Shown one piece after another: positions 2,702-48,079 of a stretch of 64,000 bases of DNA (position 1 is its first letter; every line of letters starts with the position of its first letter). Position numbers and translations under genes: made by a program. Origin of the DNA: Octopus bimaculoides (Eukaryota); the NCBI RefSeq assembly GCF_001194135.2, contig NC_068986.1, positions 6,295,260 to 6,359,259 of the forward strand. Direction: 5' to 3'. The notes beneath the pieces are model-generated. The model saw nothing but the letters and a program-made list of their open reading frames with translations, searched no databases and was not told the origin of the DNA.

Positions 2702-3087
2702 GTGTGTCTGTGGTAACTTGAGCTACTACAAATTGCATCCAAATCTCTCTTAAAACACGCCCTTTCATCAAAAGAAAGACACAGATTTACAGTATTTCAG
2801 GAAGTAAAAAAACTACACAATGGGTCTGCTACATCAGAGGCAACTCTGGGCTAAACAAAACATACTTCACATTAAAGGGTTATCTACTGAATAATACTAA
2901 TAAAGCTGATGGTATATCTTTGAAGTTTTATTCCCTGGTAAAATTCCACATAGATTGTTCAGGTAGAGTTGCCTCCCTTAGCAACAGACCTCAGAATTGT
3001 GCTCCAGCAAGGCCGCAGTCAAATGACTGAAACAAGCAAAAGAATAAAAGAATGTATGTATGTACCTATATGTAATATTCTTTTGTG

Positions 3088-3288
3088 TTCTAGGCCTGAA
3101 ATTTTGGGGGAGAGAGCCAGTCAATTAGATCGATCCCAGTATGCAACTGCTACTTAATTTATCGACCCTGAAAGGATGAAAGGCAAAGTCAACCTGGGTG
3201 GAATTTGAACTCAGAACGTAAAGACAGATGAGATACTACTAAGCATTTTGCCCAGCGTACTAAAGTTTCTGCCAGCTTCTGCGCCTTA
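3088..3288 (-). mobile_element. tRNA-derived SINE family C (variant tail)
   Basis: gaatttgaactcagaacg B-box complement and gaaaggatgaaaggcaaagtc body shared with about ten copies. Confidence 0.8.
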
Positions 3289-3720: not shown

Positions 3721-4684
3721 CATGTGCTTGTGTCTGTGTGTGCATGTATATATCAATAACTATATCTAAATATTTGTCTATCTATCTATCTATCTAATAT
3801 ATATATATGAATATGTTTATATAGGCTTATACATAATTTATGCTTTGATGTATGAAAACGCTATCTATAAATCTGTCATTACTGCATATTTATTTAAAAC
3901 TAAAAGCAGATCAAACAATTATATTGATTATCTGAAGAAAGCCAGAACGGCTCACATAAATAAATATATTAAATAAATATGTAAATAAATAGAATTTCCA
4001 AATGAGATCCTTGTCATATTGTAAATGATTCTAGAGAGATTTCTGATGAATTCCCTCTCATGTTATCCATATTAACTAAATAGATTATTCTAAAAAAAAG
4101 CTTGGTAAAAGACATATAAAGGAATATACAACTAAGTATTTAGATGACTCAATATGTGTAACTGCATCTGTAGTTGTATCCCTTACCCTGTAAACTATCA
4201 TATTTTACTGTTTAATTCCTTGTAACAGCTTCTACCTGGCAATAAATATATGGTGTGACTGTTTTAACAAAAGTTGTTACATCAGACCTGTTCTCTGTTT
4301 ATTAGTTGCAATTTTTGTTTGGCCTGCTATCTGTTTATTAGTTGCAACTTTTGTTTAATGATCTATATTCTACATATGTGTAAGTAAAATGCATAATGTA
4401 TATGGATAGATATATCACCATGATCATCATTGTTTGATGTCTGCCTTCCATGCTGGCATGAGTGGGACAATTTGACAGAAGCCGGCCAAGCAGAAGTTGG
4501 CCAGGCAGAAGCCTGCACCAGACTACTGTGTCTATACACACATACATACACACACGCACATGCGTGTTTTTTATAGCCTTCTATATGTTCGATATACAGA
4601 TTTCAGGAAGCGGTAGATAGACACAACTGTCTTCACATAACATACTTCATTTTACTCCAATACACACACACACACACACACACA

Positions 4685-4846: not shown

Positions 4847-5208
4847 AGTGGCACGTAAATAGCACCCTTTGAGCGTAATCGTTACCAGTGTCGCCTTCCT
4901 GGCACGTGAAAAGACATTCGAGCGAGGTCATTGCCAGTGCCGCCAGACTGGCTCCTATGCAGGTGGCACATAAAATACACCATTTTGAGCATGGCTGGTG
5001 TCAGTACCACCTCACTAGCCTTCGTGCCGGTGGCACGTAAAAGAACCCACTACAATCCCAGAGTGGTGGGCATTAGGAAGGGCATCCAGCTGTAGAAACT
5101 CTGCCAAATCAGATTAGAGCCTGGCGTAGCCATCTGGTTTGCCAGTCCTCAGTTAAATCGTCCAACCCATGCTAGCATGGAAAGCAGACGTTAAACGATG
5201 ATGATGAT
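4847..5208 (+). mobile_element. RTE-clade LINE 3' UTR (repeat family B), 5'-truncated
   Basis: Internal gtgccggtggcacgtaaaa units, ggaagggcatccagctgtagaaac block, catgctagcatggaaagcagacgttaaac(gat)n tail. Confidence 0.8.
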
Positions 5209-6504: not shown

Positions 6505-8110
6505 TGCAATAGAAAATTTCTTGAGACTTTCAGATGCTGAGAAATAATAGTGGTGATGACGACGGTGCTGGACGTTACCTTACCTCAGTTTATGAGAGAC
6601 AGGAGTTTCTGAAAGACTCTGGTTGTAACAGTGAAAATGAAGCTGGACCTTTAAGGGTAGGTCTCTTGCTCGGCAGTGGATCAGTAAAGATGCAGACTGA
6701 CCACAGCTGTCATCCTAATGCAGCATCAGCAGATAATAGAACAAAGAGGAGGAAGCAGACCAGCAAAGAAAACAGGATGGTGATTCAGTGCTACTTAGAA
6801 AGTGAACCTAAAAGAAGAGGCTATAGAAAACGGATGTTAACACTTTGGGTTGAGAAGAGTATGTTCAAAGTGACTGAGGAGAGATTAGTTGATCAAGCTA
6901 ATGCTATTAGGAAAAGAAAGTGGACGACAGAATTGGAGGTAGAAGAGATCACAAGAGAACTGGAAAAGAAAGACCAGCAGTGGGAAAGACAAACAACAAA
7001 AGAGATACATCTCAAATTAAAGAAGAACCTAAAGAAAAAAATAATAATAGTGCTACCAATAAAGAAGGGATAACTGGTACCAACGACTTAAGTGATTTAA
7101 TTGAGGAAGATCAGAAGATTTCAGGTGAGTTGTAGGAAGTAATGAGTAAAGAAGTAAGAAAAAGATTGCCAGCCTTAAAAGACACCAACAGAAGGAAGCT
7201 AAAAGAAATGACTAGGAAAGTAGACCGTTATCAGGAGGATAGATACTAAAAATATAGAAGACACCAACTTATTGCTCTATGCAGGAGGAGTAGCAGTCAC
7301 CAGAAGATTAGATATCTTACAGGGAAAAATTAAAAAAGAGTGGAAAAGAAGACTACAAAATAAAGTGAAGACTTTAAGACAAGATCTGAGTGGAATAGAA
7401 ACCTGGAGACTCAACAAGTTAGGAAACACAAGATGCAAATCTTCCCTCGAGGAAAGACATTTAGTCAAAGAGAAAGGATTTGGGACAGTAATAGAAGAGT
7501 TGAAACCGCGTACCATAGCAGTAGCTGGGAAGCTCTCCAGATATCAGAAAAGAATAGATCAGTATCAACAGAATAGATTATTTGACACAGACCAGAGGAA
7601 TTTTATAACTAAATAAATAGTGGAGAATGAAGTACTAAAGATGAGAAACCTAATGCAGGGGAAGCTAGAAAGTTCTGGAGAAATATTTGGGATAAATCAG
7701 TCAATCATAATAAAGATGCAGTATGGTTAAAGAAAGTGAGAGAAGAAGTAATGAGGGAAGCAGCCAGATTTAAGACTAACTAGTGCATTAATGAGTAAAG
7801 TGTTAGGAAAAATGCCAAATTGGAAGGGCCCAGGACAGGATTTAGTTCAAGGGTACTGGCTAAAGAAATTCAGTAGTTTACATGGGAGGCTGAAGGAACA
7901 AGGACAAATACATAGCCAAAACACTAGGACTTTTGAATGTATCTAACATACAGAAAATATATGTAAGATGTGTGTGGCATCTAGGCACCGCACACATCCT
8001 ATGTAAAGCACTTTCAGTACAGTGAAAATAGAAGCACCAAAACAAACCACAGCACATATCCAAGGCACATAGAGCTGCGCTCAGTCATGCAGTGAAAGCA
8101 TGTGATAAAG
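6505..8110 (+). mobile_element. R4/Dong-like non-LTR retrotransposon, internally deleted (N-terminus plus RT start fused to the extreme C-terminus)
   Basis: ENRMVIQCYLESEPKRRGYRKRMLTLW...TEERLVDQANAIRKRKW; WKRRLQNKVKTLRQDLS...QQNRLFDTDQ; MPNWKGPGQDLVQGYWLKKF; at ~7900 jumps to KYIAKTLGLLNVSNIQK...LGTAHILCKALS, then 3' UTR and (AAT)n. Frameshifts and stops present. Confidence 0.85.
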
Positions 8111-9549: not shown

Positions 9550-10480
9550 CCTTCTTCATTAGTATTATTGGTAAAAATACAACACAAAGAAGAAGGCATC
9601 CCCATCAAAATTGTTCTTCCAGATTCTGATAGGGCATTTTCCCCTCATCATATATACCATAACATCTTCAATAGAAACACTATTATGTTATCTAACTCCA
9701 CCAAACTGAGCCTTACTACCATTATTGCAGCCTCTAATAAGTGCAGACATGTGAGATACAAAGCCAGGATTACTGCCAGGGCTGGAGCTGATCACTCCAT
9801 TAATGTCTCTGGAGTCTGTACCACTTCCAAACAAGCACATTGTGAAATACACGATGTAGAAACCCACAGCATTGGGTTCAGGGAAGTGTGTAGATTTCAC
9901 CACTCTGAGCAGATCTGGACTTCCTACCCAGGATTGTGCTAACCAAACTATTTCTCTGCCATATTCTACTTTGGGTGAAGTGAGGGCTGGACCATTGGAC
10001 TCTTGGTCCAGGGCTCACCATCCTGTAGTTGAAACTGTAAGGTCCCCATCAAATGCTACCTAGCTAGCTACTACATTTAGAATAACATGTATAAGTTCAT
10101 GGGGAAGACTGCTAATTGTAGCAGGTTTTGCATCAGTACCATTGTAAACCCCGGGAATCCTTTTTCCAAGGAACGCTTGTGCATAGTTTAGGTTCTCTGC
10201 TTCATCTGTGGAGTATGTCCATTCTCTAACAGAGAGAGAGTGAAGTTAACTATACTTTGCAACAGTTGGTTTGGGGATTGCCTGGTCCTACCAGAGAGGG
10301 AGATGTACCTGCACACACTGTACCAAGGAGGGATTGAAAATTACATATCTAACAGTAACTCTTTACTTAATAAGCAGAATGAAGAAGGATTGTTTAGTGC
10401 TCATAGGAAATCTCATACCTTTTAACTCTACAAAGTGGGTTCTAGCAGTAACTATGACAGGACAGGCTAACCATCAGCCC
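9550..10480 (-). pseudogene. Decayed ~300-codon coding relic of unknown origin (possible endogenous viral element or processed pseudogene)
   Basis: One minus-strand frame with only scattered stops: ...EWTYSTDEAENLNYAQAFLGKRIPGVYNGTDAKPATISSLPHELIHVILNVVAS*VAFDGDLTVSTTGW*ALDQ...SWVGSPDLLRVVKSTHFPEPNAVGFYIVYFTMCLFGSG...SSSPGSNPGFVSHMSALIRGC...; in-register antisense shadow ORF 9535-9942. Confidence 0.6.
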
Positions 10481-10962
10481 TTGCTTTGAGTATTTTGCTG
10501 ATATCTCTCCCACTGTGCTCTTGTATTGCTGAACATGCAGAATGTTCTTAGTTGTCTTTTGTCCTAGATCAGACTACCCTTTTATTCCTTCCCCACTTAT
10601 GCACATTTGTCTCCCTTTCCAACAGTTTTTGTCCACTCACTCTGCCTTCCCCTGAGATCTCTTGTTGGAACTTTGATTCACCCTTTCACCATTTTCAAAC
10701 ACTTTGCACACGTTACTGACCTTCTAGTACACCAAGCTGCTTAAACTTTATCCTTATTTGCAACATATGCCTAAATCTGTTTGATTTCCTTGATTCATCT
10801 GCCTGCCATCGGAACAGTTTGTGGACCATTTTTTATAATGGCTGGAGTTTAAGTAATCTACTATTCCCTAACTTACACAACTTTTACAATTATAATTATT
10901 TTTTTGCTATTTTCTATTATTATCATCATGATATGATAATTATTACCACTATTGTTAATGCT

Positions 10963-11011
<49 letters not shown>

Positions 11012-11028
11012 CCACCACCACCACCACC

Positions 11029-11109
<81 letters not shown>

Positions 11110-11110
11110 T
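10963..11110 (+). repeat. Compound (ATC)n(ACC)n(ATC)n microsatellite
   Basis: Direct reading; forms the (GAT)n tail of the minus-strand element at 11110-11690. Confidence 0.95.
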
Positions 11111-11690
11111 GTTTGACTTTTGCTTTGTATTTGTACAAGTTGACTCCAAGTCTCACCCAGAAACCTCAAGAGACAACAAGTTAGAAGTTCAAGTTGGTAT
11201 TATGCCTAGGGTGCCACATACTTGGTTTTGCACATAGTATTATTCTAGATAATGTTTAAGAAAATATAAGGAAATATTTTGAAATTTTTTTTAAATTTGA
11301 GATTACATAGACAGTATTTTACCTAGAATATGGGCATTTCCCATGAGCACTATCTTTTGAATTTCTGCCATTTCGGGGTTCCCTGGTATCTGAGCTTGGT
11401 AGAAATCAACCCCTTTTGCTATCATTCCTTGGGCACCTATGACAACAGGTATTGTTTTAGTCTTGAGGTTCCACATTTTGCCAATTTCTATTTCAAGATC
11501 TTTATACTTGCTCAGTTTTTGGTAGGTCTTGACAGATAAATTTATGTCAATTGGGACAGTCATATCAATGAGGAGGCATGATTTTTGTCTGAAGCCTTTC
11601 AGTATAATGTCTGGCCTATTTGCATCTATCTTTCTGTCAGTTTAAACAGTGAAGTTCCAGAGGAGTGAGATGTGATCATTTTTATTATTA
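11110..11690 (-). mobile_element. R4/Dong-like 3' fragment with REL endonuclease and 3' UTR
   Basis: LLWNFTV*TDRKIDANRPDIILK...CLLIDMTVPIDINLSVKTYQKLSKYKDLEIEIGKMWNLKTKTIPVVIGAQG...IQKIVLMGNAHILGKILS (PD...D motif). Confidence 0.85.
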
Positions 11691-11937
11691 TTATTATTAT
11701 TATNNNNNNNNNNNNNNNNNNNNNNNNNNNNNNNNNNNNNNNNNNNNNNNNNNNNNNNNNNNNNNNNNNNNNNNNNNNNNNNNNNNNNNNNNNNNNNNNN
11801 NNNNNNNNNNNNNNNNNNNNNNNNNNNNNNNNNNNNNNNNNNNNNNNNNNNNNNNNNNNNNNNNNNNNNNNNNNNNNNNNNNNNNNNNNNNNNNNNNNNN
11901 NNNNNNNNNNNNNNNNNNNNNNNNNNNNNNNNNNNNN

Positions 11938-12108
11938 AGGTAGTAATCAGCCCGTTTCGCTGTCATTCCCAGGGCACCTATGACAATAGGTATTGTTTTC
12001 ATCTTCAGATTCCACATTTTGCTAATTTCTATTTCAAGATCTTTATATTTGCTCAGTTTTTGGTAGGTCTTGACAGATACGTTTATATCGATTGGGACAG
12101 TCATATCA
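11938..12108 (-). mobile_element. Second, diverged copy of the same R4/Dong-like C-terminus
   Basis: DMTVPIDINVSVKTYQKLSKYKDLEIEISKMWNLKMKTIPIVIGALGMTAKRADYY; several substitutions relative to the 11303 copy. Confidence 0.8.
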
Positions 12109-12221
<113 letters not shown>

Positions 12222-12222
<1 letters not shown>

Positions 12223-12432
12223 GCCTTTACACAGTTTCTAATACAGCTGTTCACTACCAGTGAACTAAGGTAACACCTCTTATTTTTCAAGCACCTTCCA
12301 GGGTATTCGAGCGATTCCAAGCAGTGCTGTTTTCTGCAAGTGCTCCACCCTTATTGCAGCCCCTGTTTGTTCCACGTACTTATCGAGATTTTTGCTCACT
12401 GTTCCTAGGGCTCTGACAATTATTGGTACTAC
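12222..12432 (-). mobile_element. R4/Dong-like 3' end, third subfamily
   Basis: VVPIIVRALGTVSKNLDKYVEQTGAAIRVEHLQKTALLGIARIPWKVLEK*, then 3' UTR and (AAC/AAT)n. Confidence 0.75.
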
Positions 12433-12580
12433 TGCTTAGCAGCATTTCGTACATCTTTACATTCTGAGTGCAAATTCTACTGAGGTTGACTTTGCCTTTC
12501 ATCCCTGGGGTCAATCTAATCAACTTACCCGCTCTCAAAATTTCAGGTCCTGTACCTATATTAGAAAAGATCATTATCAT
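12433..12580 (+). mobile_element. SINE family C, degenerate
   Basis: ttctgagtgcaaattc...gactttgcctttcatcc body. Confidence 0.65.
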
Positions 12581-13699
12581 TTTTATCTAAGTTTGTGAGC
12601 CGGCAGGATTGTTTGTGCATCTGACTAGGTGATTGGTAGCATTTGTTCTGGCTCTTTATGTTCTGAGTTCAAATTCCACTGATATTGACCTTGCATCTTT
12701 TTGTGGTCAGTGAATTAAGTACCTGTAGTGACGCATGGTTCTAGATGCCATGTTAGAACATTCATCTACGCATGCACAAGGATTAGAGCTTTCCGAAGAC
12801 CTGACAGAAGCCCCTTATGTGCATGCGCAATCATCATCAGCAGCTAGGGTTCACCACCATTCACTGTCTTCGATCGCAGCTTCTGACCAGGCAGGATGCA
12901 ACTTAGGGCAGCTCTGTGGAGAATAGACTTTTGATGGTGAGTGACACTGCGAGTCTGTGAAAATGCCTTATCACTTTTGTGTCTAACTACCAACCCAGCT
13001 GCTTTCTTCACCAAGGCATTCATGGCTACCATTAACCAGAGATGGAATGTTTATTCAGAGAAAATAAATTATTGTTATTTATTCAGAGAGATTTTGTCCT
13101 CTCCTTTCCTTCCATGTACTGTGTATGGAAATTGTGAGGCACCCAGCAAGTGCTAATCACTTTTCCTACATACCATTTGAGCACTAAGCTTGATGTGATT
13201 AACTGACCCTTTCTTCAAAAAGCCCTGTGCCAGAGTTTTAAACCTTTGTTATTATTATTTATTATAATTATCAAAATTATTATCATTATTACTATTATCA
13301 TATTATTACTATTATCATACATGGTGATTGTACTTTCATGGCTTGTAACAGGTTTGCTTGTGTTTGTGTGTTTGAGTTTTTAGGAGACTGTTGCACATGT
13401 GGATATATTTGTGATTGGGCCCTGTGTATGTGTGAGTGTCTCTATAGATTTAATATGTGTGTATGTGAATAGCAGTGCCAGGTCATGCATCTACAATTAC
13501 TCATATTTTTAAACTTCATGAACTTGGCGACCTGCTGCCTGCTAAGCTGTTTCCTTGTGTGATACATACATAGATAGATAGAATAGAAGACAGCCAAAGT
13601 GCTATCTAGTACATCCAGAAACTTAAAATTTTATTAATCTTTATAACTCGTCTCAAACATTTAGCATTTTGTACTATGCTATATTGACCTTTAAATTCT

Positions 13700-14000
13700 C
13701 AACCATTCTTTTTCCAGTTTGGGAACTTTATCTGCAACACTAACAAATTTTGCAAGGAGAACCAAGTTATATAAAAGGTTCTAAGAACTATAATCAATAG
13801 AAGGAAACTGAAGATAAAGCTTTAGTGTATACTTAACTTCTAAATTCCTCACTAAACTCTTTGTAAATTCTGTATTCAGCTTGAATGACTTTCACAAGCT
13901 CTTTATGAAGAGCTACTCTCTTAGCACACATCAGACTATAGTGTACAGGACTCTGTCAAAGATCTTCTTCAGATTCATAAAAGCTAACTAATTGTCTAAC
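13700..14000 (-). mobile_element. Degenerate RTE-clade reverse transcriptase fragment
   Basis: AFMNLKKIFDRV...VIQAEY...FSEEFEVKV...LIIVLE resembles the RTE AFVDLEKAFDRVP / QGSVLSPLLF region, with frameshifts. Confidence 0.6.
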
Positions 14001-14004
14001 TATT

Positions 14005-14163
14005 CACAGGCACGGTTGTGTGGTAAGAAGCTTGCTTCCCAACCACATGGTTCTGGGTTCAGTTCCATTATGTGGCACCTTGGGCAAGCATCTTTGACTA
14101 TAGCCTCAGGTCAACCAAAGACTTGTTAGTTGATTTAGCAGAGAAAAACTGAAAGAAGTCCAT

Positions 14164-14194
<31 letters not shown>

Positions 14195-14590
14195 GACCAA
14201 AGTGTACGTACGCTGCTATATTTTTTTATTTATAAAAAATACAAAAATGGGATAAGAACGCAAAACATCCAGACAGTTAGGTGATACTAAAAAGGGACAA
14301 CAAAACATCGAAACAGACGATACAAAGAAAACAAGGACGGGTCATCTGGGGTTGTATGTGTGTGTGTGTGAGTGTGTCTTTGCATCTGTGTTTGTTCTCC
14401 ACCACTGCTTGACAACTGGTGGTACTTTGCAGCTTAGTATCTCCACAACTTAGCAATTTGACAGAACTGACCAATAGAATAAATACCTGAAAAAAAAAGT
14501 TCTGGGTTTGATTTATTTGACTAAAATTCTTCAAGGCAATGCCCCAACATGGCTACACTCTAATAACTGTAACAAGTAAAAGACAAAAAG
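14005..14590 (+). mobile_element. SINE family A, interrupted in its central (TA)n tract by an unrelated ~155-bp insert (14190-14345)
   Basis: Head 14005-14165 and tail 14350-14590 match the uninterrupted copies at 15295 and 29262. Confidence 0.75.
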
Positions 14591-15213
14591 TATTAAATAA
14601 AATTCCATCATGTGTGTGTGCACAAAATTTGTCATTCTTGCTTCTAGTATCAGATTGTGAGAAAAACAACAACAACAACAACAACAAAAAATGGTATTTA
14701 TCCCCACCTAACCTTTTTTTTTTACCATATTTCTTTTGCAATGCATAATCTTTGTTTTAGTTAATTTAGAAAACAATGAAAAATTTAGTAAAATAACATT
14801 GTCATTGTTAAACCGATGTTTGGAACATAAATTAGCATGAAATTTTGATGAGAGATTTCAATTTAGATCCTTTTAAACAGAAAGTCTGTGACATAGAACT
14901 AGGAGTAATGTCAGGCAGGTTGGTATTAATAGGATTAAAAGTGTTAGAAGACAATATTGTGATAGTTACCATGAGAAAATCTCTCATATGAGCTTCCGGT
15001 GCATATAAACATTCTTGTTTACATCACTAGCATGAGATAAATCAAGTGCCATTGCCTTTAAAAAAAATTGGTGTTGTGTTGAATTTCCTAGTGAGCATTA
15101 TTACATCCCATGGCTCTACATTCTTGAAGAAGTGCAATAAAAGCTCTCTTAATTGTAGAATAGGAAAAAGTTGATAACAGGAAGAGCATCTGATCATTGA
15201 AATATGGCCTTAA

Positions 15214-19964: not shown

Positions 19965-20470
19965 ATTAGGCCTCACCGAGGCAATGACTAGTGATCAAAA
20001 CCTTTGGAAATATGTTGTGCTTGAGAAGACCCAGCAAGCCAAGTGAGACCATAAACCGTGGCCTATGCCAGTGGTGTAACCAGCCCACTTATGCGTACCT
20101 TTCCTTCATTGGACACCAAACTCTGCTTGCGAAGACCTGTTGAGGCAACTGAAATTGGAATGAAATTCAATGACAGCACCGCTTGACTGGCATCCTTGCT
20201 AGTGGAGTGCTGAGAGCACCATCCGAGCGTGATCGTTGCCAGGGCCACTGACTGGCTACCATGCCGGTAGCACGTAAAAAGCACCATTCTAGCATCGCTT
20301 TATTGGCACTTGTGCCGGCGGCACGTGAAAAATAACATTTGCGCGAGGTCGTCGCCAGTGCCGCTGGACTGGCTCCTGTGCAGGTGGCACGTAAAAAACA
20401 CCATTTGAGCGTGGCCGTTGGCAGTACTGCTTGACTGACCCTCGTGCCGGTGGCACGTAAAAGCACCCAC
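19965..20470 (+). mobile_element. RTE-clade LINE 3' end (ORF2 stop plus 3' UTR), cut off at 20470
   Basis: LGLTEAMTSDQNLWKYVVLEKTQQAK*, then family B modules; the usual tail after aagcacccac is missing. Confidence 0.8.
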
Positions 20471-21300
20471 GTGCCAAATAATATGATATATTTCATATTT
20501 TCAAAACTGACACTCCCCTCATCACAATGTTTTCACACAAGGCAAAAAAGCAAATACAGAAATAGAGTTATACAATTACATACCAGCCACCAGAGAAAAA
20601 TTTCTTTATTGCCCACAAGGGGCAAACACAAAGACATGTGGGGATACATAACAAAGAAAAAGAAAAAAAGAAAAGGCGAATGTTATAATGAATGATAAAA
20701 TGAAAATGAGAAATGGAATGATGAGTTACTTCATTTTACTTCTTTTATTTTTTCCTTTTAAACTCGGAGCCTTTCTGACACCTTAAACACTCCTGCATAG
20801 CTTCTTTCATTCCTGTTGGCCCACGAAGTGTCCGACTGTTCAGAATCGGACACCCCAGTGTAACTATTATCTGACCAGCTGATTTCTTCCATTTTTCCTG
20901 GCTTACCCTCCTCTATGAGGAGGGAGAGCACAACTATCCTGCCACAGGGCAGTAAAAACCAAAGTGTTCAAAGAACACTACGACAATTAACAACGATAAT
21001 CGACCAGGCACTCGAGAAAATATTTCTTTATTGCTCACAATGGACCAACACAGAGGGGACAACATAAATACATGTTGGGACACATCACAAAGAAAAAGAA
21101 AATAAAGAAAAGAAAAGGCGTATGTTACAATTCATGATAAAATGAAAATGAGAAATGGAATGAAGTTTCCTCAGTTTTCCAAATTTTTATTTGTGTTATC
21201 GTACATTATTACGTAGGTTCCTTTCTTCCTTTTTCCGGGAGAGGGGAGGTTGAATTACTTGTCTCTGACTGTGTTTGCTTACGTGTTGGAGGGGTGTTAA
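20470..21300 (-). mobile_element. Inverted arm: two head-to-tail 3' ends of the ORF1-only element plus target or hammerhead-like sequence
   Basis: 20470-20785 is the reverse complement of ~22990-23330; 21003-21300 is the reverse complement of ~22680-22790 plus 23055-23212; 20758-20892 encodes MEEISWSDNSYTGVSDSEQSDTSWANRNERSYAGVFKVSERLRV*. Confidence 0.8.
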
Positions 21301-23192
21301 ACTTTGCAGAGGCAGCAGGAAAGAAAGAAAGAGAAACTATTACTGAAATGAAAAATTTGAAAGCATTTACGTCAATGTTAAAAAAAAGGAGCGGACGGAT
21401 ATAAAAGTAGCCCCTCCAACAGAAACAGTAGAACAAGTAAACAAGAACAGAATTGGAAAAACGGTTCGGAACAGTCGAAGTGAGGTTTACATCAGAGGAG
21501 GTGGCTAGGCGGCATACCTCTAAAACTCTATATATATGGGAAGAAGAACATCCAAAGTAAAAATCACAAATATTCCTCCTGAAGTAGATGCTGCCTGGCT
21601 TGTGGCAGCCATAATAATGAACCAGGAGGAAGAAATCTCCATTCTCCAGGACTCAGTGGTGGAAGAGATGAACTGGAAGGGACAATGTCTAAACATGTTG
21701 ATCCAGGCAGAGATCCCCACGCTGGAAGAAGTTCCAGAAATAATAAATTTCAGCGAAGAGAGAGTGATTGTCTTCGTGGAAGGCAGGAAGACAAGATGTT
21801 TCAACTGCGGGCTAAAGAGCCATATAAGGTCCGAATGCAAACCCGAAAAAATAAAAGTGCAAGAAGAAAAGCAAGGAGAAAAAGCAGCGACGGTGGAAGC
21901 GTCACCTACAACAATAGAGAGGGCACCACTACCATCAAAGCCAGAAGAAGAGTGTGAAGATAAAGAAAAGGAGCAGGGGTGGTCGACTGTCTTAATAAAA
22001 AAACGAAGACCACCCTTTCCAAACTGGAAATAGATGAGAAAATAGGAAAAGAAAAAGACACCAACAAATAATAGACTAATCAACCGTTTGGCAGCTGTGT
22101 CATCGAAAGACATTCACATATACAGAATAGGCCGGAAGGATTGCGGACGGATTAAGTCGGAATTCTTTCACGACGTAGGCCCTCTCAGAATGGATTTCTC
22201 TCCATACATTTACGAGGGCCTACGTCCAAATATGCCCCGAGCCCGGAAAAGGAGAAAGAAAAGAAAATGAAAACGAAGAAACCTCGAACCACTGATGCAA
22301 TGGTAAGCAATGTCAAACGTTCATGTAGGTTGTATAAATGTGCATGGCCTGGTGTCAAGCTGGAAGCAGGTACGCAGGTGCTACAAGTGTGGCCAGAAAG
22401 GTCACATACGAGCAATCTGCTCTCTACAAAAGAAAAAAAATTGGAAGAACTGGTAAAAGAAAAGGAGGAGACAATACCTCCACCAGAAGAAACAGAAGAA
22501 AAAGCAGGCAGAACAGAAGACCAATGGGTGACACCAGGAAAGAAAAGGAAGAGAAAAAGAAGGAAACCAGGCAAAATAAATCCTGAAACCCACCCCACCC
22601 AACTACCACCCTCACCCTCTTCTCCCCACCCTCTCCCTACAGACACTGAATNNNNNNNNNNNNNNNNNNNNNNNNNACCCACCCCCCTCCAACACGAAAA
22701 CAAACACAGTCAGACACAAGTAACTCAATCTGCCCTTCCCTAGAAAAAAGGAAGAAAAGAACCTACATAATAATGTACGATAAAAAAAAATTGGTAAGAC
22801 ATTAGAGCGGTGGACACACGCAGGTTCGACAACGTGCAAGGGTGGCATTGCTGCCTGTTGCTGGACGAAATCCAAAGAGGGAAAATTATAAAATTTAAAA
22901 AGGACATAAAATATGGCAAGTCGATATGCAAAATCTGCCAGAGACTATGGAGTACACGTTCTTATTGAAGGAGTACGGAGTAGACATTTTGGAAGGCTCC
23001 GGGTTAAAAAGAAAAAAAAGAACAGAAGTAAAATGAAGAAACTCAGAAGTGGGGCTGAGGAAACTTCATTCCATTTCTCATTTTCATATTTTTATCATTC
23101 ATTATAACATTCGCCTTTTCTTTTTTTCTTTTTCTTTGTTATGTATCCCCACATGTCTTTGTGTTGTCCCCTCTCTGTAGGCAATAAAGAAA
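21300..23192 (+). mobile_element. ORF1(gag)-like, RT-less non-LTR element (L1/Tx1-like ORF1), frameshifted, with AATAAA 3' end
   Basis: NFAEAAGKK N-terminal motif, RRM-like FGTVEVRFTSEEVA...KVKITNIPPE, CX2CX4HX4C knuckles CFNCGLKSHIRSEC (21797-21838) and CYKCGQKGHIRAIC (22379-22420), K/E/P-rich tail, no endonuclease or RT motifs before AATAAA at 23183. Confidence 0.75.
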
Positions 23193-23269
23193 TATTTTCA
23201 CGAGTGGTTGGTATGTAATTGTATAATTGTATTTCCGTATTTGTTTTTTTTTTTTACATTGTGTGAAAA

Positions 23270-23350
23270 CATCCTGATGAAGGGAGTGTCAGTTTTAAAA
23301 ATATGAAATATATCATGTTACTTGGCACGTCTTTGAAACGGTCGTAGATG
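23270..23350 (+). ncRNA. Type I hammerhead ribozyme motif (family iii) with extended stem II
   Basis: CAUC-CUGAUGA-[stem II ~12 bp plus long loop]-GAAAC-GGUC-GUA-GAUG; all core nucleotides present, stem I CAUC/GAUG. Confidence 0.65.
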
Positions 23351-23734
23351 GAATTTTTTAAAATTTTTGTTATATTTTCGTGGTATTTTAGTACGTCCTT
23401 TTAATGTTTTATCCTCTCAAATTTTTATTACACCAATGTATCGTAACTTTTAAATGTAAAACTCACTGTGTTTTATGTATCATATCGTTATTTATTTATA
23501 TGTATTTTTATATTTATATATTTTGAATCTTTAGATCAGTTTTATAAATGTAGAAGAAGATATATATATATATTTGATTTTGTGTGTGGTCATTATGTTC
23601 CTCTAGTTTCCGCTTGCATTGCCTCCGTTCAGATTATTAAACGGAATATAGCTCACTTGGAGCACTACAACTCCAGTCTATATTTTATTTGCGAGTATTG
23701 TTAATATTAGCAATCTCAAAATAAAGCAGTGTAT

Positions 23735-25607: not shown

Positions 25608-26050
25608 ATCATCATCATCATCGTTTAACGTCCGCTTTCCATGCTAGCATGGGTTGGACGACTTGACTGAGGACTGGTGAAACCGGATGGCAACACCAGG
25701 CTCCAATCTAAATTTGGCAGAGTTTCTACAGCTGGATGCCCTTCCTAACGCCAACCACTCAGAGAGTGTAGTAGGTGCTTTTACGTGTCACCTGCACGAA
25801 GACCAGTCAGGCGATACTGGCAACGGCCACGCTCGAAATGGTGTCTTTTATGTGCCACCCGCACAAGCCAGTCCAGGGGCACTAGCAACGATCTCGCTCT
25901 AAAATCCTACGGAGACCAGTCAGGCGGTACTGGCAACGGCCACGCTCAAAATGGTGCATCTTATGTGCCACCCGCACAAGAGCCAGTCCAGGGGCACTGG
26001 CAACGATCTTACTTGGCTTGCCGGGTCTTCTCACGCATAGCACATTTCCA
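25608..26050 (-). mobile_element. RTE-clade LINE 3' end (family B), young copy
   Basis: Near-identical to 39566-39894 and 58978-59390; includes ...REKTRQAK* ORF end. Confidence 0.85.
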
Positions 26051-26301: not shown

Positions 26302-26998
26302 GTTCCAGAAATTCTGAACCTTTTCTGGACTGAATAGTGACTGGTGACAAGAAATGGGTTCCCTATAAAAATGTCAAGTGCCAATGACAGTGGGTAAGGA
26401 AAGTAGAAACACCAGCACCCCAGGCTAAAGAAGGCCTTCACCCATGTAAGGTGGTGTTATCTGTTTGGTGGGATACGAAAGGTTTAGTCCACTTTGACCT
26501 TTTAAATCCAAACCAAACAATAACAAAGGAAATCTACTGCGAGCAGCTTGAGTGGCTTCAATCAGTGCCAGAAGAAAGACAACAATCTTTGGTTTCAAGA
26601 CGAAAGGTGTTCTTCCATCAGGATAATGCTCGGCCACATACAGCAAGGATGACATTCCAGAGGCTAGAGCATTTTGAATGGGAAATGATACCCCACCCAC
26701 CATATTTGCCGGACATTGTCCAATTCGATTATCATTTATTCTGCAGTCTTCAAAATCATTTAGACACAAAGAATATGAATTCTGCAGATGTGGTCAGTAC
26801 AGTACTGGAGGAGTATTTTTCATTACGGACAAGTGAGTTTTGGAAGAGGGACTTTGCAAGTCTACCAGATAGATGGAAGAGCATTGCAGAAAATGAAGAA
26901 GAGTACATTTTAGATTAAAAAAGAACTTTGTTTATCTTAATTTTGAAAATAACAGAGGTATAAAAAAAAAACCATGTTATTTATGGGTTGACTCAATA
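26300..26998 (+). mobile_element. mariner (DD34D) transposase 3' half with right TIR
   Basis: EPFLD*IVTGDKKWV, VVLSVWWDTKG, FHQDNARPH, HPPYLPDIVQFDYHLF; 34 residues counted between D2 and D3. Confidence 0.93.
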
Positions 26999-30292: not shown

Positions 30293-30500
30293 CTGGCAGA
30301 ATCATTAGCACGCTAGGCGAATGCTTAGCGGTATTTCGTCTGCTGCTACGTTCTGAGTTCAAATTCCGTCGAGGTCGACTTTGCCTTTCATCCTTTCGGG
30401 GTTGATTAAATAAGTACTAGTTACACACTGAGGTCGATGTAATCGACTTAATCCCTTTGTTTGTCCCTTCTATGTTTAGCCCTTTGTGAGCAATAAAGAA
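30293..30500 (+). mobile_element. SINE family C, near full length
   Basis: ctggcagaatcattagc head, gttctgagttcaaattcc B-box, tail tatgtttagccctttgtgagcaataaagaa. Confidence 0.88.
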
Positions 30501-39565: not shown

Positions 39566-39894
39566 ATCATCATCATCATCATCATCGTTTAACGTCCGCT
39601 TTCCATGCTAGCATGGGTTGGACGATTTGACTGAGGACTGGTGAAACCGGATGGCAACACCAGGCTCCAATCTAATCTTGCAGGGTTTCTACAGCTGGAT
39701 GCCCTTCCTAACGCCAACCACTCAGAGAGTGTAGTGGGTGCTTTTACGTGTCACCCGCACGAAAACGGCCACGCTCGAAATGGTGTCTTTTATGTGCCAC
39801 CCGCACAAGCCAGTCCAGGGGCACTGGCAACGATCTCGCTCGAAAATCCTACAGGAGCCAGTCAGGCGGTACTGGCAACGGCCACGCTCAAAAT
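39566..39894 (-). mobile_element. RTE-clade LINE 3' UTR (family B), runs into a gap
   Basis: Near-identical to 25608 and 58978 copies. Confidence 0.85.
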
Positions 39895-46906: not shown

Positions 46907-47374
46907 TGCATGCACACACATACATGCATGCACACACATGCACATTTTCCATCTACATAATTCCACTCCCAAAGTAGAGATCCTAGTTAGCTTTTTAAAG
47001 CTTATGGCACTAAATATGGTAAGTAATTTTTTTAAATCAATATGTTAATTTTTCACACCTAGCCATGTATGTATGATATTGTACATCTATCTATTGATTC
47101 TCTCTTCGCTATTAATAAATTAACTGTTTAATGTTGAATGCAGTAAATGTGTAACATTAACTGAACAGCTAAATAAACAGAAAAAAAAACAAAAAAAAAA
47201 AAGCAGTGTAATATTCACAGATATTTTTCATTGCTGAACATTATGTTGTAGATGATATCTTTGAAAATCTATGAATTGCACCAAATCGTTGGTTGATTTC
47301 ATCTTATCAGTACAAACTATGTTCCTACAAGATGTATTAAGACATCACTAATGATGGCCAAATGTTTATTATTT

Positions 47375-47585
47375 CTACTCTAGGCACAAGGCCTGAAATT
47401 TTGGGGTGGTAGAGCAGTCAGTTAGATCAATCTCAGTATGCAACTTGTACTTAAATTTATCGACCCCGAAAGGATGAAAGGCAAAGTCGACTTCTGCGGA
47501 ATTTGAACTCAGAAAGTAAAAACAGACGAAATACCGCCAAGCATTTTGCCCAACGGGCTAACGTTTCTGCCAGCTCTCCGCTTTG
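47375..47585 (-). mobile_element. SINE family C variant
   Basis: cgaccccgaaaggatgaaaggcaaagtcgac body and tRNA-like head. Confidence 0.8.
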
Positions 47586-48079
47586 ATGGCTGAATGTTTA
47601 TTGATTAATCACAGGATTCATACTGAGATCAACATTTTAATTTGCTTATTGATATGACATGTCACTTACTACAATGGTAGCATTCCAAGCTGTTGCTATT
47701 GTTGTAAGAATAGCTGAGGTGTGAAGGGTGTGGGAGGAATTACCCAGGGACCCCCGATGTTTGTAATGCAAATAATAAAGTACATGTTTAGATACTTAAT
47801 GGTGGTGAGTTAAAAAATTTTAATGAACTAAAATTACATCTTTAATGAGACCTTCCCATCTTGTGTGTCAGGGACTACACCGTCCAAGGCTTCCTTCTTT
47901 ATTTAAAACAATAGGATATGATTTGATTTAAAAGGAATTTTGTAACTATTTCCTGTAGATCAAGCACACATGTAGAGTTTCCCGTCCTTAAGGCTCTCTA
48001 TCTATATGGCTTATGGTTATATTGGGTCACTATTTTAGGTGTGGCAGGTAAGATTGATGAAGATTATTATGCTGCTGTT

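What the first reader, a model, noticed from the sequence alone, without database searches (positions are those of the whole stretch)
20470..23350. RT-less, gag(ORF1)-only retroelement in a large inverted composite ending in a hammerhead
Seen: a plus-strand unit (21300-23192) encoding only ORF1-type motifs (FAEAA, RRM-like, CCHC) and ending in AATAAA. It is preceded by an inverted block (20470-21300) of two diverged copies of its own 3' end, and followed by a hammerhead motif. No endonuclease or RT lies between ORF1 and the poly(A) signal. Established: ORF1-only non-LTR elements exist (mammalian HAL1, Drosophila HeT-A), and Penelope-like elements form inverted pLTR duplications with hammerheads. 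Inference: a non-autonomous ORF1-only family mobilised in trans, possibly carried inside a PLE-type ribozyme-terminated unit. I know of no description of this combination.
Basis: partly seen in the sequence, partly recalled or inferred. Interest (0 to 1): 0.85.

Follow-up and report, generated by a model that had tools for sequence, protein, structure and literature searches.

The report
Broken octopus L1-like LINE pile-up
This stretch is a cluster of dead fragments of L1-like jumping genes in an octopus genome: one piece is an ordinary two-gene element cut off just after its second gene starts, another comes from a sister lineage that really has lost that gene, and the supposed hammerhead ribozyme is a chance look-alike.

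Summary
The inverted repeats and the gag/ORF1 motifs are real. The hammerhead is not, and the plus-strand "unit" is a chimaera rather than one ORF1-only element.

Part A (21303-22376) is a decayed ORF1 plus the first 22 codons of an endonuclease ORF2. Its closest relatives in Octopus vulgaris, O. sinensis and O. bimaculoides continue into APE endonuclease and reverse transcriptase in 4 of 4 loci.

At 22355-22378, A is fused to part B (22379-23330). B is the CCHC-to-end half of a different ORF1 followed directly by a 3'UTR. B belongs to a lineage that does lack ORF2. Two full copies in O. sinensis are colinear over 1.4 kb at 62% identity, running from ORF1 straight into the tail. One keeps an intact 464-aa ORF and a poly(A) tail. 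This is a HAL1-like "half-LINE".

The tail core is shared with the 3'UTRs of the full-length LINEs and with a SINE-like repeat.

The two inverted blocks (L, M) are further 5'-truncated copies of that tail.

The assembly gap joins colinear sequence. Relatives have 2 nt there.

No Penelope-like feature was found beyond the layout.

Verdict: an ordinary TE graveyard that exposes a modestly interesting half-LINE lineage.

The parts
20170..20468 (.). Flank: 65/66-nt tandem repeat (GGCACGTAAAAA... unit) that abuts the 3' end of copy L. Other arrays of it occur elsewhere in the window. Context only, not part of the LINE debris.
20469..20773 (-). Copy L: a 5'-truncated copy of the LINE 3' module (end of ORF1/K-run, tail core, distal tail). 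Against 22993-23330 the core is 95% identical and the distal tail 89%. All similarity stops at 20773.
20774..21002 (.). Spacer between L and M. It has no nucleotide match to B (z=1.3) or to any held locus. There is only a faint peptide resemblance (ERSYAGVFKVSERLRV, 20808-20761, minus strand) to the end of B's ORF1.
21003..21319 (-). Copy M: a 5'-truncated, internally deleted copy. Tail core 21003-21174 corresponds to 23055-23212. The proline-rich ORF1 piece 21190-21297 (NTPPTRKQTQSETSNS) corresponds to 22681-22789. M lacks the equivalent of 22790-23054 and the distal tail. Its inner end lies somewhere in 21298-21319, where it meets or overlaps part A.
21303..22270 (+). Part A, ORF1 pseudogene of an autonomous L1-like LINE, 5'-truncated at about codon 60. 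21303-21535 is broken by stops and one frameshift (FAEAA, RFGTVEVRF). 21536-22030 is an open 165-codon stretch (RRM-like fold; CCHC 21797-21838). In-frame stops lie at 22031 and 22043. The C-terminal domain IYRIGRKD..FFHDVGPLR..YIYEGLRP spans 22067-22243. The frame closes at 22268.
22310..22376 (+). Part A, stub of ORF2: MSNVHVGCINVHGLVSSWKQVR, the first 22 codons of the APE endonuclease (L002: MMNYICVGCLNVRGLGSSGKQGR). Nucleotide homology to full-length LINEs (74-77%) stops here.
22355..22378 (+). A/B junction. A-type homology ends at about 22376 and B-type homology begins at about 22378. There is ambiguous microhomology (GGAAGCAG against GGAGGGCAG) just upstream.
22379..23054 (+). Part B, the 3' half of a second ORF1 from the ORF2-less lineage. 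It holds CCHC 22379-22420, an acidic/basic linker with QWVTPGKKRKRKRRK at 22522-22566, a proline-rich tract interrupted by the gap, THPPPTRKQTQSDTSNS at 22677-22727, and a decayed C-terminal part ending ..RYAKSARDYGVHVLIEGVRSRHFGRLRV at 22922-23005 followed by a K-run. It has several frameshifts and stops.
22652..22676 (.). Assembly gap (25 N). The flanks are colinear with L004 and L003, which have 2 nt at this point.
23055..23212 (+). Part B, 3'UTR core module (TCATTCCATTT...GTCCCCTCT...GGCAATAAAGAAAT, AATAAA at 23183). It is shared with the 3'UTRs of full-length LINEs in L002, L003 and L005 and with the ORF1-only copies in L003 and L004. Its last ~40-50 nt are shared with a SINE-like repeat.
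23213..23330 (+). Part B, distal tail, shared only with copy L (89%). Both copies end at ...TTGGCACG(T) with different flanks and no poly(A).
23274..23343 (+). The 'hammerhead' string CTGATGA...GAAAC-G-GTC. It straddles the repeat end (23330). It has no viable helix III and a poor helix I, and no covariance-model hit. Judged a chance look-alike.

Best explanation
The locus is a cluster of dead fragments of L1-superfamily LINEs in an octopus genome (genus Octopus or a close relative).

SHOWN.
- The plus-strand unit (about 21303-23330) is a 5'-truncated chimaera of two related lineages.
- Part A is an autonomous-type element: an ORF1 pseudogene, the inter-ORF spacer and the first 22 codons of the APE-endonuclease ORF2.
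- At 22355-22378, A is joined to part B. B is the CCHC-to-stop half of the ORF1 of an ORF2-less sister lineage, followed directly by that lineage's 3'UTR.
- Intact relatives of A have ORF1, then an APE-RT-zinc-finger ORF2, then a 3'UTR and poly(A).
- Relatives of B have ORF1, then the 3'UTR and poly(A), with no ORF2. They form a HAL1-like 'half-LINE'.
- The 3'UTR core module is common to both lineages and to a SINE-like repeat.
- The two inverted blocks are further 5'-truncated copies of that same 3' module. L is tail only. M is tail plus a piece of ORF1 with an internal deletion.
- Nothing in the window is coding-competent.
- The hammerhead-like string is a chance match.

INFERRED.
- The shared 3' module is the handle by which the ORF2 protein of the autonomous elements would copy B-type and SINE RNAs in trans by target-primed reverse transcription.
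- The A/B chimaera most likely arose in one retrotransposition event. The RT started on a B RNA, switched template at a short microhomology to an A RNA, and stopped early.
- L and M are separate insertions, not arms of one unit.
For: FAMILY AND HOST.
- 193 relatives of the 165-aa ORF at E<=1e-3.
- The named ones are from Octopus vulgaris, O. sinensis and O. bimaculoides.
- The window shares interspersed repeats at 75-91% with all octopus loci.

PART A IS A TRUNCATED AUTONOMOUS LINE.
- tblastn of the L002 ORF1 against the window gives 56% over 124 aa and 52% over 105 aa, running through the two in-frame stops.
- Nucleotide homology of 74-78% covers 22105-22375 and includes the ORF2 start.
- In L001, L002, L003 and L005 the ORF1 homologue is followed by EN-RT.
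- The L002 ORF2 carries Exo_endo_phos, RVT_1 and zf-RVT domains and matches human L1 ORF2p at E=1e-61.

PART B IS AN ORF2-LESS LINEAGE.
- Window 22352-22646 and 22677-22740 align to L004 10284-10575 and 10583-10648. Window 22379-22645 and 23082-23194 align to L003 3422-3701 and 4064-4185.
- L003 2795-4195 and L004 9692-11066 form one 1.4-kb colinear alignment at 62% identity, from ORF1 into the tail.
- No ORF2 lies within 10 kb downstream in L004, or between ORF1 and the tail in L003.
- L003:2666-4057 is an open 464-codon frame, followed by the tail and a poly(A) at about 4270-4295.
- The B-type ORF1 is 33% identical to the L002 ORF1 over 285 aa (E=1.5e-55).

SHARED 3' MODULE.
- An nhmmer profile of the core hits downstream of each full-length ORF2 whose 3' end lies within the held sequence in L002, L003 and L005. 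It also hits downstream of both ORF1-only copies, at L, M and B in the window, and partially at the ends of SINE-like repeats.

L AND B ARE NOT A SIMPLE INVERTED DUPLICATION.
- Identity is 95% in the core and 89% in the distal tail, then no similarity at all upstream (z=1.3). M has a different internal structure.

GAP.
- Relatives have 2 nt where the window has 25 N.

HAMMERHEAD REJECTED.
-.
Against: - No octopus genome could be searched by DNA. The copy number of B-type elements, target-site duplications and the uniqueness of the A/B junction are therefore untested.
- The ORF2-less lineage rests on two full copies (L003, L004) plus fragments (window B and M, Logan contigs L006 and L007). All loci were reached through ORF1 homologues, which is an ascertainment bias.
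- L and B end at the same base without poly(A), unlike L003_B and L002. Their true 3' terminus is therefore not understood.
- An inverted 5'-truncated copy abutting the 5' end of a unit is the layout described for Penelope-like elements (PMC8557442). It is not a textbook outcome of LINE insertion, and it is left unexplained here.
- The window is a short-read draft with 15 gaps, so a contig-level chimaera at 22376 or 21300 cannot be excluded without reads.
- The template-switch origin is an inference from order, orientation and a weak microhomology only.
Confidence: 0.7

Rival explanations
1. One reading: the whole plus unit (A-type ORF1 + ORF2 stub + half of a B-type ORF1 + tail) is one member of a propagating, non-autonomous ORF1-only family. 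It would be a second, independent 'half-LINE' born from an A/B recombinant and mobilised in trans.
For: The unit carries a complete (though now decayed) ORF1 and the shared LINE 3' module, with no ORF2 in between. It is 5'-truncated like a genuine retrotransposed copy. HAL1-type elements are reported to have arisen several times independently in mammals (PMC5753468).
Against: No other copy with this junction was seen in about 120 kb of octopus loci. No protein in the 5.8-billion-sequence collection shares even three 5-mers with the junction peptide, although that search has limited sensitivity. A useless half ORF1 and an ORF2 stub inside a 'master' element is an awkward design.
Confidence: 0.2
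2. Nested insertion plus deletion. A 5'-truncated B copy inserted into codon 22 of the ORF2 of a resident A element, and the rest of A was later deleted.
For: LINEs of this group do insert next to or into one another. L003 holds four successive head-to-tail units of different subfamilies, and L002 holds units with poly(A) at each junction.
Against: Nothing downstream of 23330 resembles ORF2 or any part of the element. A second event must therefore have removed exactly the remainder. No poly(A) or TSD marks the B insertion.
Confidence: 0.15
3. Penelope-like composite: an ORF1-only cargo carried in a PLE-type unit with inverted pseudo-LTRs and a terminal hammerhead ribozyme.
For: The layout matches the published PLE layout: an inverted 5'-truncated copy abutting the 5' end, and partial repeats of the 3' end (PMC8557442). 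The string CTGATGA..GAAAC..GTC occurs twice in the window against 0.045 expected from shuffles.
Against: No hammerhead covariance-model hit at any threshold tried. Helix III would have a 1-nt loop and helix I is mostly mismatched. Half of the motif lies outside the repeat, and the other arm has G in place of the essential C3. No PLE-type RT or GIY-YIG ORF was noticed among the window's ORFs of 130 aa or more, though no dedicated search was run. The repeated module is the 3'UTR of L1-type LINEs. The arms are of different structure and share no sequence upstream of the tail.
Confidence: 0.03
4. Assembly artefact: the inversion, the A/B junction or both are chimeric joins of a short-read draft.
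For: The window has 15 gaps. PLE and LINE papers note that short-read assemblies mishandle such repeats (PMC8557442; PMC9115989). The only scaffold join in the unit (22652-22676) falls next to where M's homology begins.
Against: The gap's flanks are colinear with two gap-free relatives. L, M and B differ from one another by 5-23% and have different structures, so they are distinct genomic sequences, not one sequence placed twice. The L/spacer, M/A and A/B junctions lie inside contiguous sequence with no long shared repeat to mislead an assembler.
Confidence: 0.1

Closest known systems
HAL1 ('half-L1') of mammals: a non-autonomous L1 derivative that encodes only ORF1p (PMC5753468, citing Smit 1999 and Bao & Jurka 2010)
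   Same: The B-type lineage (window 22379-23330, L003:2666-4295, L004:9692-11066) has an ORF1 homologous to that of the autonomous LINEs and no ORF2. It has a 3' end shared with the autonomous elements. One copy has an intact ORF and a poly(A) tail. Two copies are colinear but only 62% identical, which implies a lineage that evolved on its own.
   Different: The host is a cephalopod. ORF1 is of the RRM-like + CCHC-knuckle kind, not the coiled-coil/RRM/CTD kind of mammalian L1. Trans-mobilisation, copy number and TSDs are untested. The window copy is a dead, 5'-truncated fragment fused to a piece of an autonomous element.
L1-superfamily LINEs with an ORF1 carrying RRM + CCHC knuckle ('type I' ORF1p in the classification of Khazina & Weichenrieder; L1/Tx1-like; recalled from memory for the classification)
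   Same: Full-length relatives (L002, L003, L001) have ORF1 with a CCHC knuckle and a ferredoxin/RRM-like fold. Their ORF2 has APE endonuclease, RT and zf-RVT domains, and they end in a 3'UTR and poly(A). ORF2 matches human L1 ORF2p at E=1e-61 over about 730 aa.
   Different: The window holds only ORF1 and 22 codons of ORF2. The clade within L1/Tx1 was not resolved. The relatives form head-to-tail arrays in two species.
Chimeric retrocopies made by RT template switching during L1 target-primed reverse transcription (for example U6/L1 and L1/L1 chimaeras; recalled from memory)
   Same: The order and orientation fit. The 3' part comes from one RNA (B) and the 5' part from another (A). The join is at a short microhomology, and the whole is 5'-truncated.
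   Different: No TSD or poly(A) could be identified, and single-event origin is inferred, not shown.
Penelope-like elements with inverted or tandem pseudo-LTRs and hammerhead ribozymes (PMC8557442)
   Same: An inverted 5'-truncated copy of the 3' end lies immediately at the 5' end of the unit, with a further partial copy next to it.
   Different: There is no hammerhead. No PLE RT or GIY-YIG was noticed among the window's ORFs (no dedicated search). The repeated module is an L1-type 3'UTR. The arms share only the tail.
SINE/LINE pairs with a common 3' tail (Ohshima & Okada, cited in PMC9115989; PMC5786205)
   Same: A ~230-bp SINE-like repeat (for example window 62877-63108, minus strand) ends in the last ~40-50 nt of the same 3'UTR core (..GTCCCCTCT..CCCCTTGTGGGCAATAAAGAAAT).
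   Different: Only some copies of the repeat carry this tail. ARAGORN finds no tRNA in it. The partnership is inferred from sequence only.

Membership tests
L1-superfamily autonomous LINE (part A and its relatives) | ORF2 with an APE-type endonuclease | tested here: met
   Relatives: Exo_endo_phos on L002:11337-11756. Window: only the first 22 codons remain (22310-22376).
L1-superfamily autonomous LINE (part A and its relatives) | ORF2 with an L1-type reverse transcriptase | tested here: met
   Relatives: RVT_1 and zf-RVT domains, and E=1e-61 to human L1 ORF2p. Window: absent, with no tblastn hit in 64 kb. The window copy is therefore a fragment, not a functional member.
L1-superfamily autonomous LINE (part A and its relatives) | ORF1 upstream of ORF2; poly(A) 3' end; 5'-truncated copies | tested here: met
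   ORF1-ORF2 order in L001, L002, L003 and L005. A poly(A) of about 35 nt at L002 15222-15256. Window part A starts at about codon 60 of ORF1.
HAL1-like ORF1-only LINE derivative (part B lineage) | ORF1 homologous to that of an autonomous LINE of the same genome | tested here: met
   L003_B ORF against L002 ORF1: 33% over 285 aa, E=1.5e-55. The window B knuckle and linker align to L003_B and L004_B.
HAL1-like ORF1-only LINE derivative (part B lineage) | No ORF2: ORF1 is followed directly by the 3'UTR, as a lineage trait and not a one-off deletion | tested here: met
   L003 2795-4195 and L004 9692-11066 form one colinear alignment at 62% identity. There are no EN/RT hits between ORF1 and the tail. 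Window B and M show the same contiguity. This is based on few copies.
HAL1-like ORF1-only LINE derivative (part B lineage) | 3' end shared with the autonomous partner | tested here: met
   The core module lies downstream of each full-length ORF2 whose 3' end is within the held sequence, and downstream of both ORF1-only copies.
HAL1-like ORF1-only LINE derivative (part B lineage) | Many dispersed copies with TSDs; mobilisation in trans by ORF2p | not testable with these tools
   No octopus genome is searchable by DNA here. Only a poly(A) on L003_B and several 5'-truncated copies were seen.
Hammerhead ribozyme | Score to a hammerhead covariance model | tested here: not met
   No hammerhead family at gathering score, at E<=10 in 4.2 kb or at E<=10 in 221 nt.
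Hammerhead ribozyme | Three helices around the CUGANGA / GAAA / UH core | tested here: not met
   A long helix II can be drawn. Helix III would close on a 1-nt loop (GAAA-C-G-G-UC), and helix I pairs at only about 3 of 7 positions (read). The fold z-score is -0.46.
Hammerhead ribozyme | Conservation in paralogous copies | tested here: not met
   The inverted arm has GTGATGA (C3 to G). Its sequence beyond the repeat end is unrelated. GAAAC..GTC lies outside the repeat.
Penelope-like element | PLE-type RT with GIY-YIG endonuclease | not tested
   No search with a PLE RT or GIY-YIG query was run. Indirect indications only: no such ORF was noticed among the window's ORFs of 130 aa or more. All of 20469-23330 except the 229-bp spacer is accounted for by L1-type ORF1, the ORF2 stub and the 3'UTR.
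Penelope-like element | Pseudo-LTR architecture: partial tandem and/or inverted 5'-truncated copy at the 5' end | tested here: inconclusive
   The layout is present. The arms share only the tail, differ in structure and belong to an L1-type family. In five other loci the tails are all in the same orientation as the ORFs.
Twin-priming L1 inversion | The inverted segment is the part of the same RNA lying just 5' of the direct segment | tested here: not met
   The inverted blocks are copies of the 3' end, not of upstream sequence. They differ from B in structure.

The most novel reading that the evidence does not exclude
Octopus genomes harbour an old, diversified ORF1-only 'half-LINE' lineage, a cephalopod analogue of mammalian HAL1. 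At least one copy is still coding (an intact 464-aa ORF in O. sinensis). The lineage shares a 3' recognition module with autonomous L1-like LINEs and with a SINE-like repeat, so three kinds of RNA would compete for one ORF2 protein. The A/B chimaera in this window could be a snapshot of how such half-elements recombine with their autonomous partners.
Probability: 0.45. Interest if true: 0.45.

Novelty: new member of a known kind. Interest (0 to 1): 0.3.

Why it matters
The locus itself is ordinary: a graveyard of LINE fragments with no function to propose.

Following it up gave two results.
1. A striking claim (a gag-only retroelement inside a ribozyme-terminated Penelope-type unit) is removed. 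The ribozyme fails every test, and the well-preserved ORF1 is simply the front end of a truncated two-ORF LINE.
2. The back end of the unit points to a real ORF2-less L1-derived lineage in octopuses, with one intact, polyadenylated copy and deep divergence between copies. ORF1-only LINE derivatives are known from mammals (HAL1) and from Drosophila telomeres. My three literature searches, which were not aimed at molluscs as such, turned up no mollusc example.

Octopus genomes are rich in retroelements, and LINE activity in the octopus brain is under study (PMC9115989). For those reasons, a lineage that makes ORF1 protein without ORF2 and shares its tail with autonomous LINEs and a SINE is worth a proper genome-wide description. 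It does not open a long-standing question.

Tried and rejected
- The search for homologous proteins on the 165-aa ORF found nothing. With the family alignment it returned only P0082. On the A/B junction peptide it found nothing. The word index is evidently too coarse for this family, and the exhaustive HMMER search was what opened the case.
- The look-up of encoding contigs found no record for the window's own ORFs. The same locus could therefore not be fetched from a long-read assembly.
- P0082 and P0021 were not on record either.
- Pfam sees only a sub-threshold zinc knuckle in the window ORFs.
- The family profile against PDB sequences hits only zinc knuckles.
- The fold search gave only weak RRM/ferredoxin-like matches, so 'RRM-like' stays a fold-level resemblance.
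- I considered that the C-terminal part of the B-type ORF might be a leftover of the ORF2 C-terminus. BLAST gave nothing, so this was dropped.
- I considered terminal inverted repeats of a DNA transposon for 20469/23330. This was rejected: no TSD was found, the arms are the 3'UTR of LINEs, and their upstream parts are unrelated.
- Twin priming was considered and rejected (see the membership test).
- ARAGORN finds no tRNA in the SINE-like repeat.
- The bacterial promoter/terminator scan is irrelevant here and was empty.
- Logan contigs L006 and L007 are B-like but too short to show the tail. The tail-core profile does not hit them.

Full report
WHAT THE WINDOW IS. The 64-kb window is a gappy draft of a eukaryotic genome. 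It has 15 runs of N, many microsatellites, a mariner-like transposase remnant and interspersed repeats. The only open frame of note in the finding is 21536-22033 (165 aa). A word-indexed search found no relatives. An exhaustive HMMER search of 1.84 billion representatives found 193 at E<=1e-3. Those with names are from Octopus vulgaris, O. sinensis and O. bimaculoides. The window shares interspersed repeats at 75-91% with octopus loci. The host is an octopus.

THE OBSERVATION. The inverted repeats are real and far beyond chance.
- 20469-20773 against 22993-23330: 83%, E=4e-98.
- 21003-21174 against 23055-23212: 81%, E=9e-43.
- 21190-21297 against 22681-22789: 86%, E=3e-30.

The ORF1 motifs are real. 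FAEAA lies at 21303, RFGTVEVRF at 21462, and CCHC knuckles at 21797-21838 and 22379-22420. An AlphaFold model of the 165-aa ORF (pLDDT 80) gives a beta-alpha-beta-beta-alpha-beta domain. Its weak best fold matches include several RRM domains, none significant. No RT is present anywhere in the window.

Three points need correction.
- The repeat continues 140 bp past the AATAAA, to 23330.
- AATAAA occurs six times on the plus strand of 20401-23400.
- A short stub of an endonuclease gene is present (see below).

THE GAP (tested first, as asked). The flanks of 22652-22676 align colinearly to two gap-free relatives from chromosome-level assemblies. L004 and L003 have 2 nt where the window has 25 N. 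With 2 nt the homologous reading frame runs through..PLPTDTE-x-THPPPTRKQTQSDTSNS, against L004 ..ADTKPTHSLPTRKQKIDTQNN. With the nominal 25 N it is shifted. The join is therefore sound and the gap length is over-estimated.

PART A (21303-22376): A TRUNCATED AUTONOMOUS LINE. Loci around five relatives were fetched. In O. vulgaris (L002) the closest relative, P0001 (57% identity), is ORF1 of a full-length element. ORF1 spans 9908-11328. An ORF2 spans 11337-14734 and carries Exo_endo_phos, RVT_1 and zf-RVT domains. That ORF2 matches human L1 ORF2p at E=1e-61. A 3'UTR and a poly(A) of about 35 nt follow.

The same ORF1-then-EN-RT order holds in L001, L003 and L005.

The window aligns to this element from about codon 60 of ORF1. 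The stretch 21303-21535 is broken by stops and a frameshift. The open 165 codons follow. Two in-frame stops lie at 22031 and 22043. The C-terminal domain IYRIGRKD..FFHDVGPLR..YIYEGLRP follows. The alignment continues at 74-78% nucleotide identity into the start of ORF2. There the window reads MSNVHVGCINVHGLVSSWKQVR against MMNYICVGCLNVRGLGSSGKQGR in L002, and the homology stops at about 22376.

PART B (22379-23330): A MEMBER OF AN ORF2-LESS LINEAGE. From 22378 onward the window aligns to a different ORF1, from its CCHC knuckle onward. That ORF1 is the one in L004 (protein P0007) and in L003:2630-4060. In both of those loci ORF1 runs straight into a ~130-bp conserved tail core ending in ..TGTGGGCAATAAAGAAAT, with no EN or RT in between.

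L003 2795-4195 and L004 9692-11066 form a single colinear alignment at only 62% identity. The ORF1-to-tail architecture is therefore old and inherited, not a one-off deletion. The L003 copy has an open 464-codon frame from the ATG at 2666. It also has a UAUAAA and a poly(A) at about 4270-4295. Its ORF1 is 33% identical to that of the autonomous L002 element over 285 aa.

This is what mammalian HAL1 is: 'a non-autonomous derivative of L1 [that] encodes only ORF1p', which arose several times (PMC5753468). The window's B copy is 5'-truncated and frame-broken.

THE SHARED TAIL. A profile of the tail core hits in five places.
- Downstream of each full-length ORF2 whose 3' end is within the held sequence in L002, L003 and L005.
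- Downstream of both ORF1-only copies.
- At L, M and B in the window.
- With its last ~40-50 nt, at the 3' ends of a ~230-bp SINE-like repeat, for example window 62877-63108.

In L002 the poly(A) tail lies about 270 nt further on. I infer, but have not shown, that the module is the handle recognised by the ORF2 protein. If so, B-type and SINE RNAs would be copied in trans.

THE A/B JUNCTION. A-type homology ends, and B-type homology begins, within 22355-22378, at a weak microhomology. The order fits one target-primed reverse transcription event that started on a B RNA, switched to an A RNA and stopped early: the 5' part comes from A, the 3' part with the 3' end comes from B, and the whole is 5'-truncated. 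That origin is an inference.

Three alternatives remain open. They are a B insertion into A followed by deletion, a propagating recombinant family, and an assembly chimaera. No other copy of the junction was seen in the held loci or in the protein collection. Neither search is decisive.

THE INVERTED BLOCKS.
- L (20469-20773) is tail only. It is 95% identical to B in the core and 89% in the distal tail. Similarity then stops abruptly, with z=1.3 for the next ~200 bp.
- M (21003 to about 21319) is the tail core plus a proline-rich ORF1 piece. It lacks the 265 bp between them and the distal tail.

The two blocks therefore differ in structure from each other and from B. This argues for separate 5'-truncated insertions rather than an inverted duplication of one unit.

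Elements of this group do pile up. L002 has at least three head-to-tail full-length units with poly(A) at each junction. L003 has an ORF1-only copy followed by four units of different subfamilies. Insertion into the A-rich tails of older copies would give the head-to-tail arrays. It does not explain the head-to-head M/A arrangement here. That arrangement resembles the layout described for Penelope-like elements (PMC8557442), and I leave it unexplained.

THE HAMMERHEAD. CTGATGA (23274), GAAAC (23336) and GTC (23341) are present.
- No Rfam hammerhead model matches at gathering score, at E<=10 over 4.2 kb, or at E<=10 over 221 nt, where hits as weak as 13.5 bits were listed.
- The fold is no better than shuffles (z=-0.46).
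- Helix III would close on a single-nucleotide loop, and helix I pairs at about 3 of 7 positions.
- The 3' half of the motif lies beyond the repeat end at 23330.
- The paralogous arm has G for the essential C3 and an unrelated flank.

The strict string occurs twice in the window against 0.045 expected in shuffles. The second occurrence (52599) also has no hammerhead hit. I judge both to be chance.

VERDICT. The finding is a dead mosaic of L1-type LINE debris. The Penelope/ribozyme reading is rejected. It is right, by way of relatives, for the lineage that supplies the unit's 3' half. Novelty: a new member of a known kind (a HAL1-like half-LINE in a cephalopod), pending genome-wide confirmation. 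Interest is low to moderate.

Noticed in passing
L002:4600-20000 (O. vulgaris OX597840.1) and L003:2600-20850 (O. sinensis CM016867.1): Full-length L1-like LINEs stand head to tail. L002 has at least 3 units with a ~5,284-bp period, a ~35-nt poly(A) at each junction and ORFs 97-100% identical. L003 has four successive units of different subfamilies (ORF1 39, 65, 86 and 71% identical to L002), preceded by the ORF1-only element. The mixed subfamilies argue for repeated insertion next to older copies rather than tandem duplication.
   Followed up: partly
L003:2666-4295: An intact 464-codon ORF1-only element (RRM-like region, CCHC, acidic/basic linker, proline-rich tract, its own C-terminal domain). 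It is followed by the LINE tail core, a UAUAAA and a ~22-nt poly(A). This exact protein is not in the protein collection.
   Followed up: partly
window 62877-63108 (-), 3073-3277 (-), 47365-47586, 54879-55060, 30293-30500: A ~230-bp SINE-like interspersed repeat (head GGCAGAAACGTTAGCACGC..GTTCTGAGTTCAAATTCC). The copy at 62877 ends in the LINE 3'UTR module ..GTCCCCTCTATGTTTAGCCCCTTGTGGGCAATAAAGAAAT, which suggests a SINE/LINE pair with a common tail. ARAGORN calls no tRNA in it.
   Followed up: partly
window 20170-20468, 25771-25955, 51914-52051, 39734-39892, 59144-59172, 4979-5050: Short arrays of a 65/66-nt tandem repeat (unit containing GGTGGCACGTAAAAA). One array abuts the end of copy L. 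Its origin was not identified.
   Followed up: no
window 26451-26918 (+): A mariner-like transposase remnant (..HQDNARPHTA..PYLPD..), 155-aa open frame.
   Followed up: no
window 11938-12320 (-): A C-terminal remnant of another retroelement protein (..KYKDLEIEISKMWNLKMKTIPIVIGALGMTAKR), cut by the gap at 11704-11937 and followed by an I-rich low-complexity run.
   Followed up: no
window 52437-52650: A second CTGATGA..GAAAC..GTC string at 52599, inside a hairpin-like region that gives a weak MIR8643 hit (37.7 bits against a gathering score of 135). There is no hammerhead hit.
   Followed up: partly
protein P0123 (MetaClust UPI0006959F66, 1135 aa): A gene model that fuses Helitron Rep/PIF1-helicase domains with a B-type ORF1 fragment (residues about 466-700). 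It is probably a half-LINE copy inserted in a Helitron and read through by the gene predictor.
   Followed up: no
window 6534-7073 (+): A 179-aa open frame (..RRGYRKRMLTLWVEKSMFKVTEERLVDQANAIRKRKWTTELEVEEI..). It was not identified and not found as a recorded gene.
   Followed up: no
window 23213-23330 and 20469-20586: Copies B and L end at the same base (..TTGGCACG/T) with unrelated flanks and no poly(A), unlike their polyadenylated relatives. Either this subfamily has a non-poly(A) terminus or both copies lost their tails.
   Followed up: no
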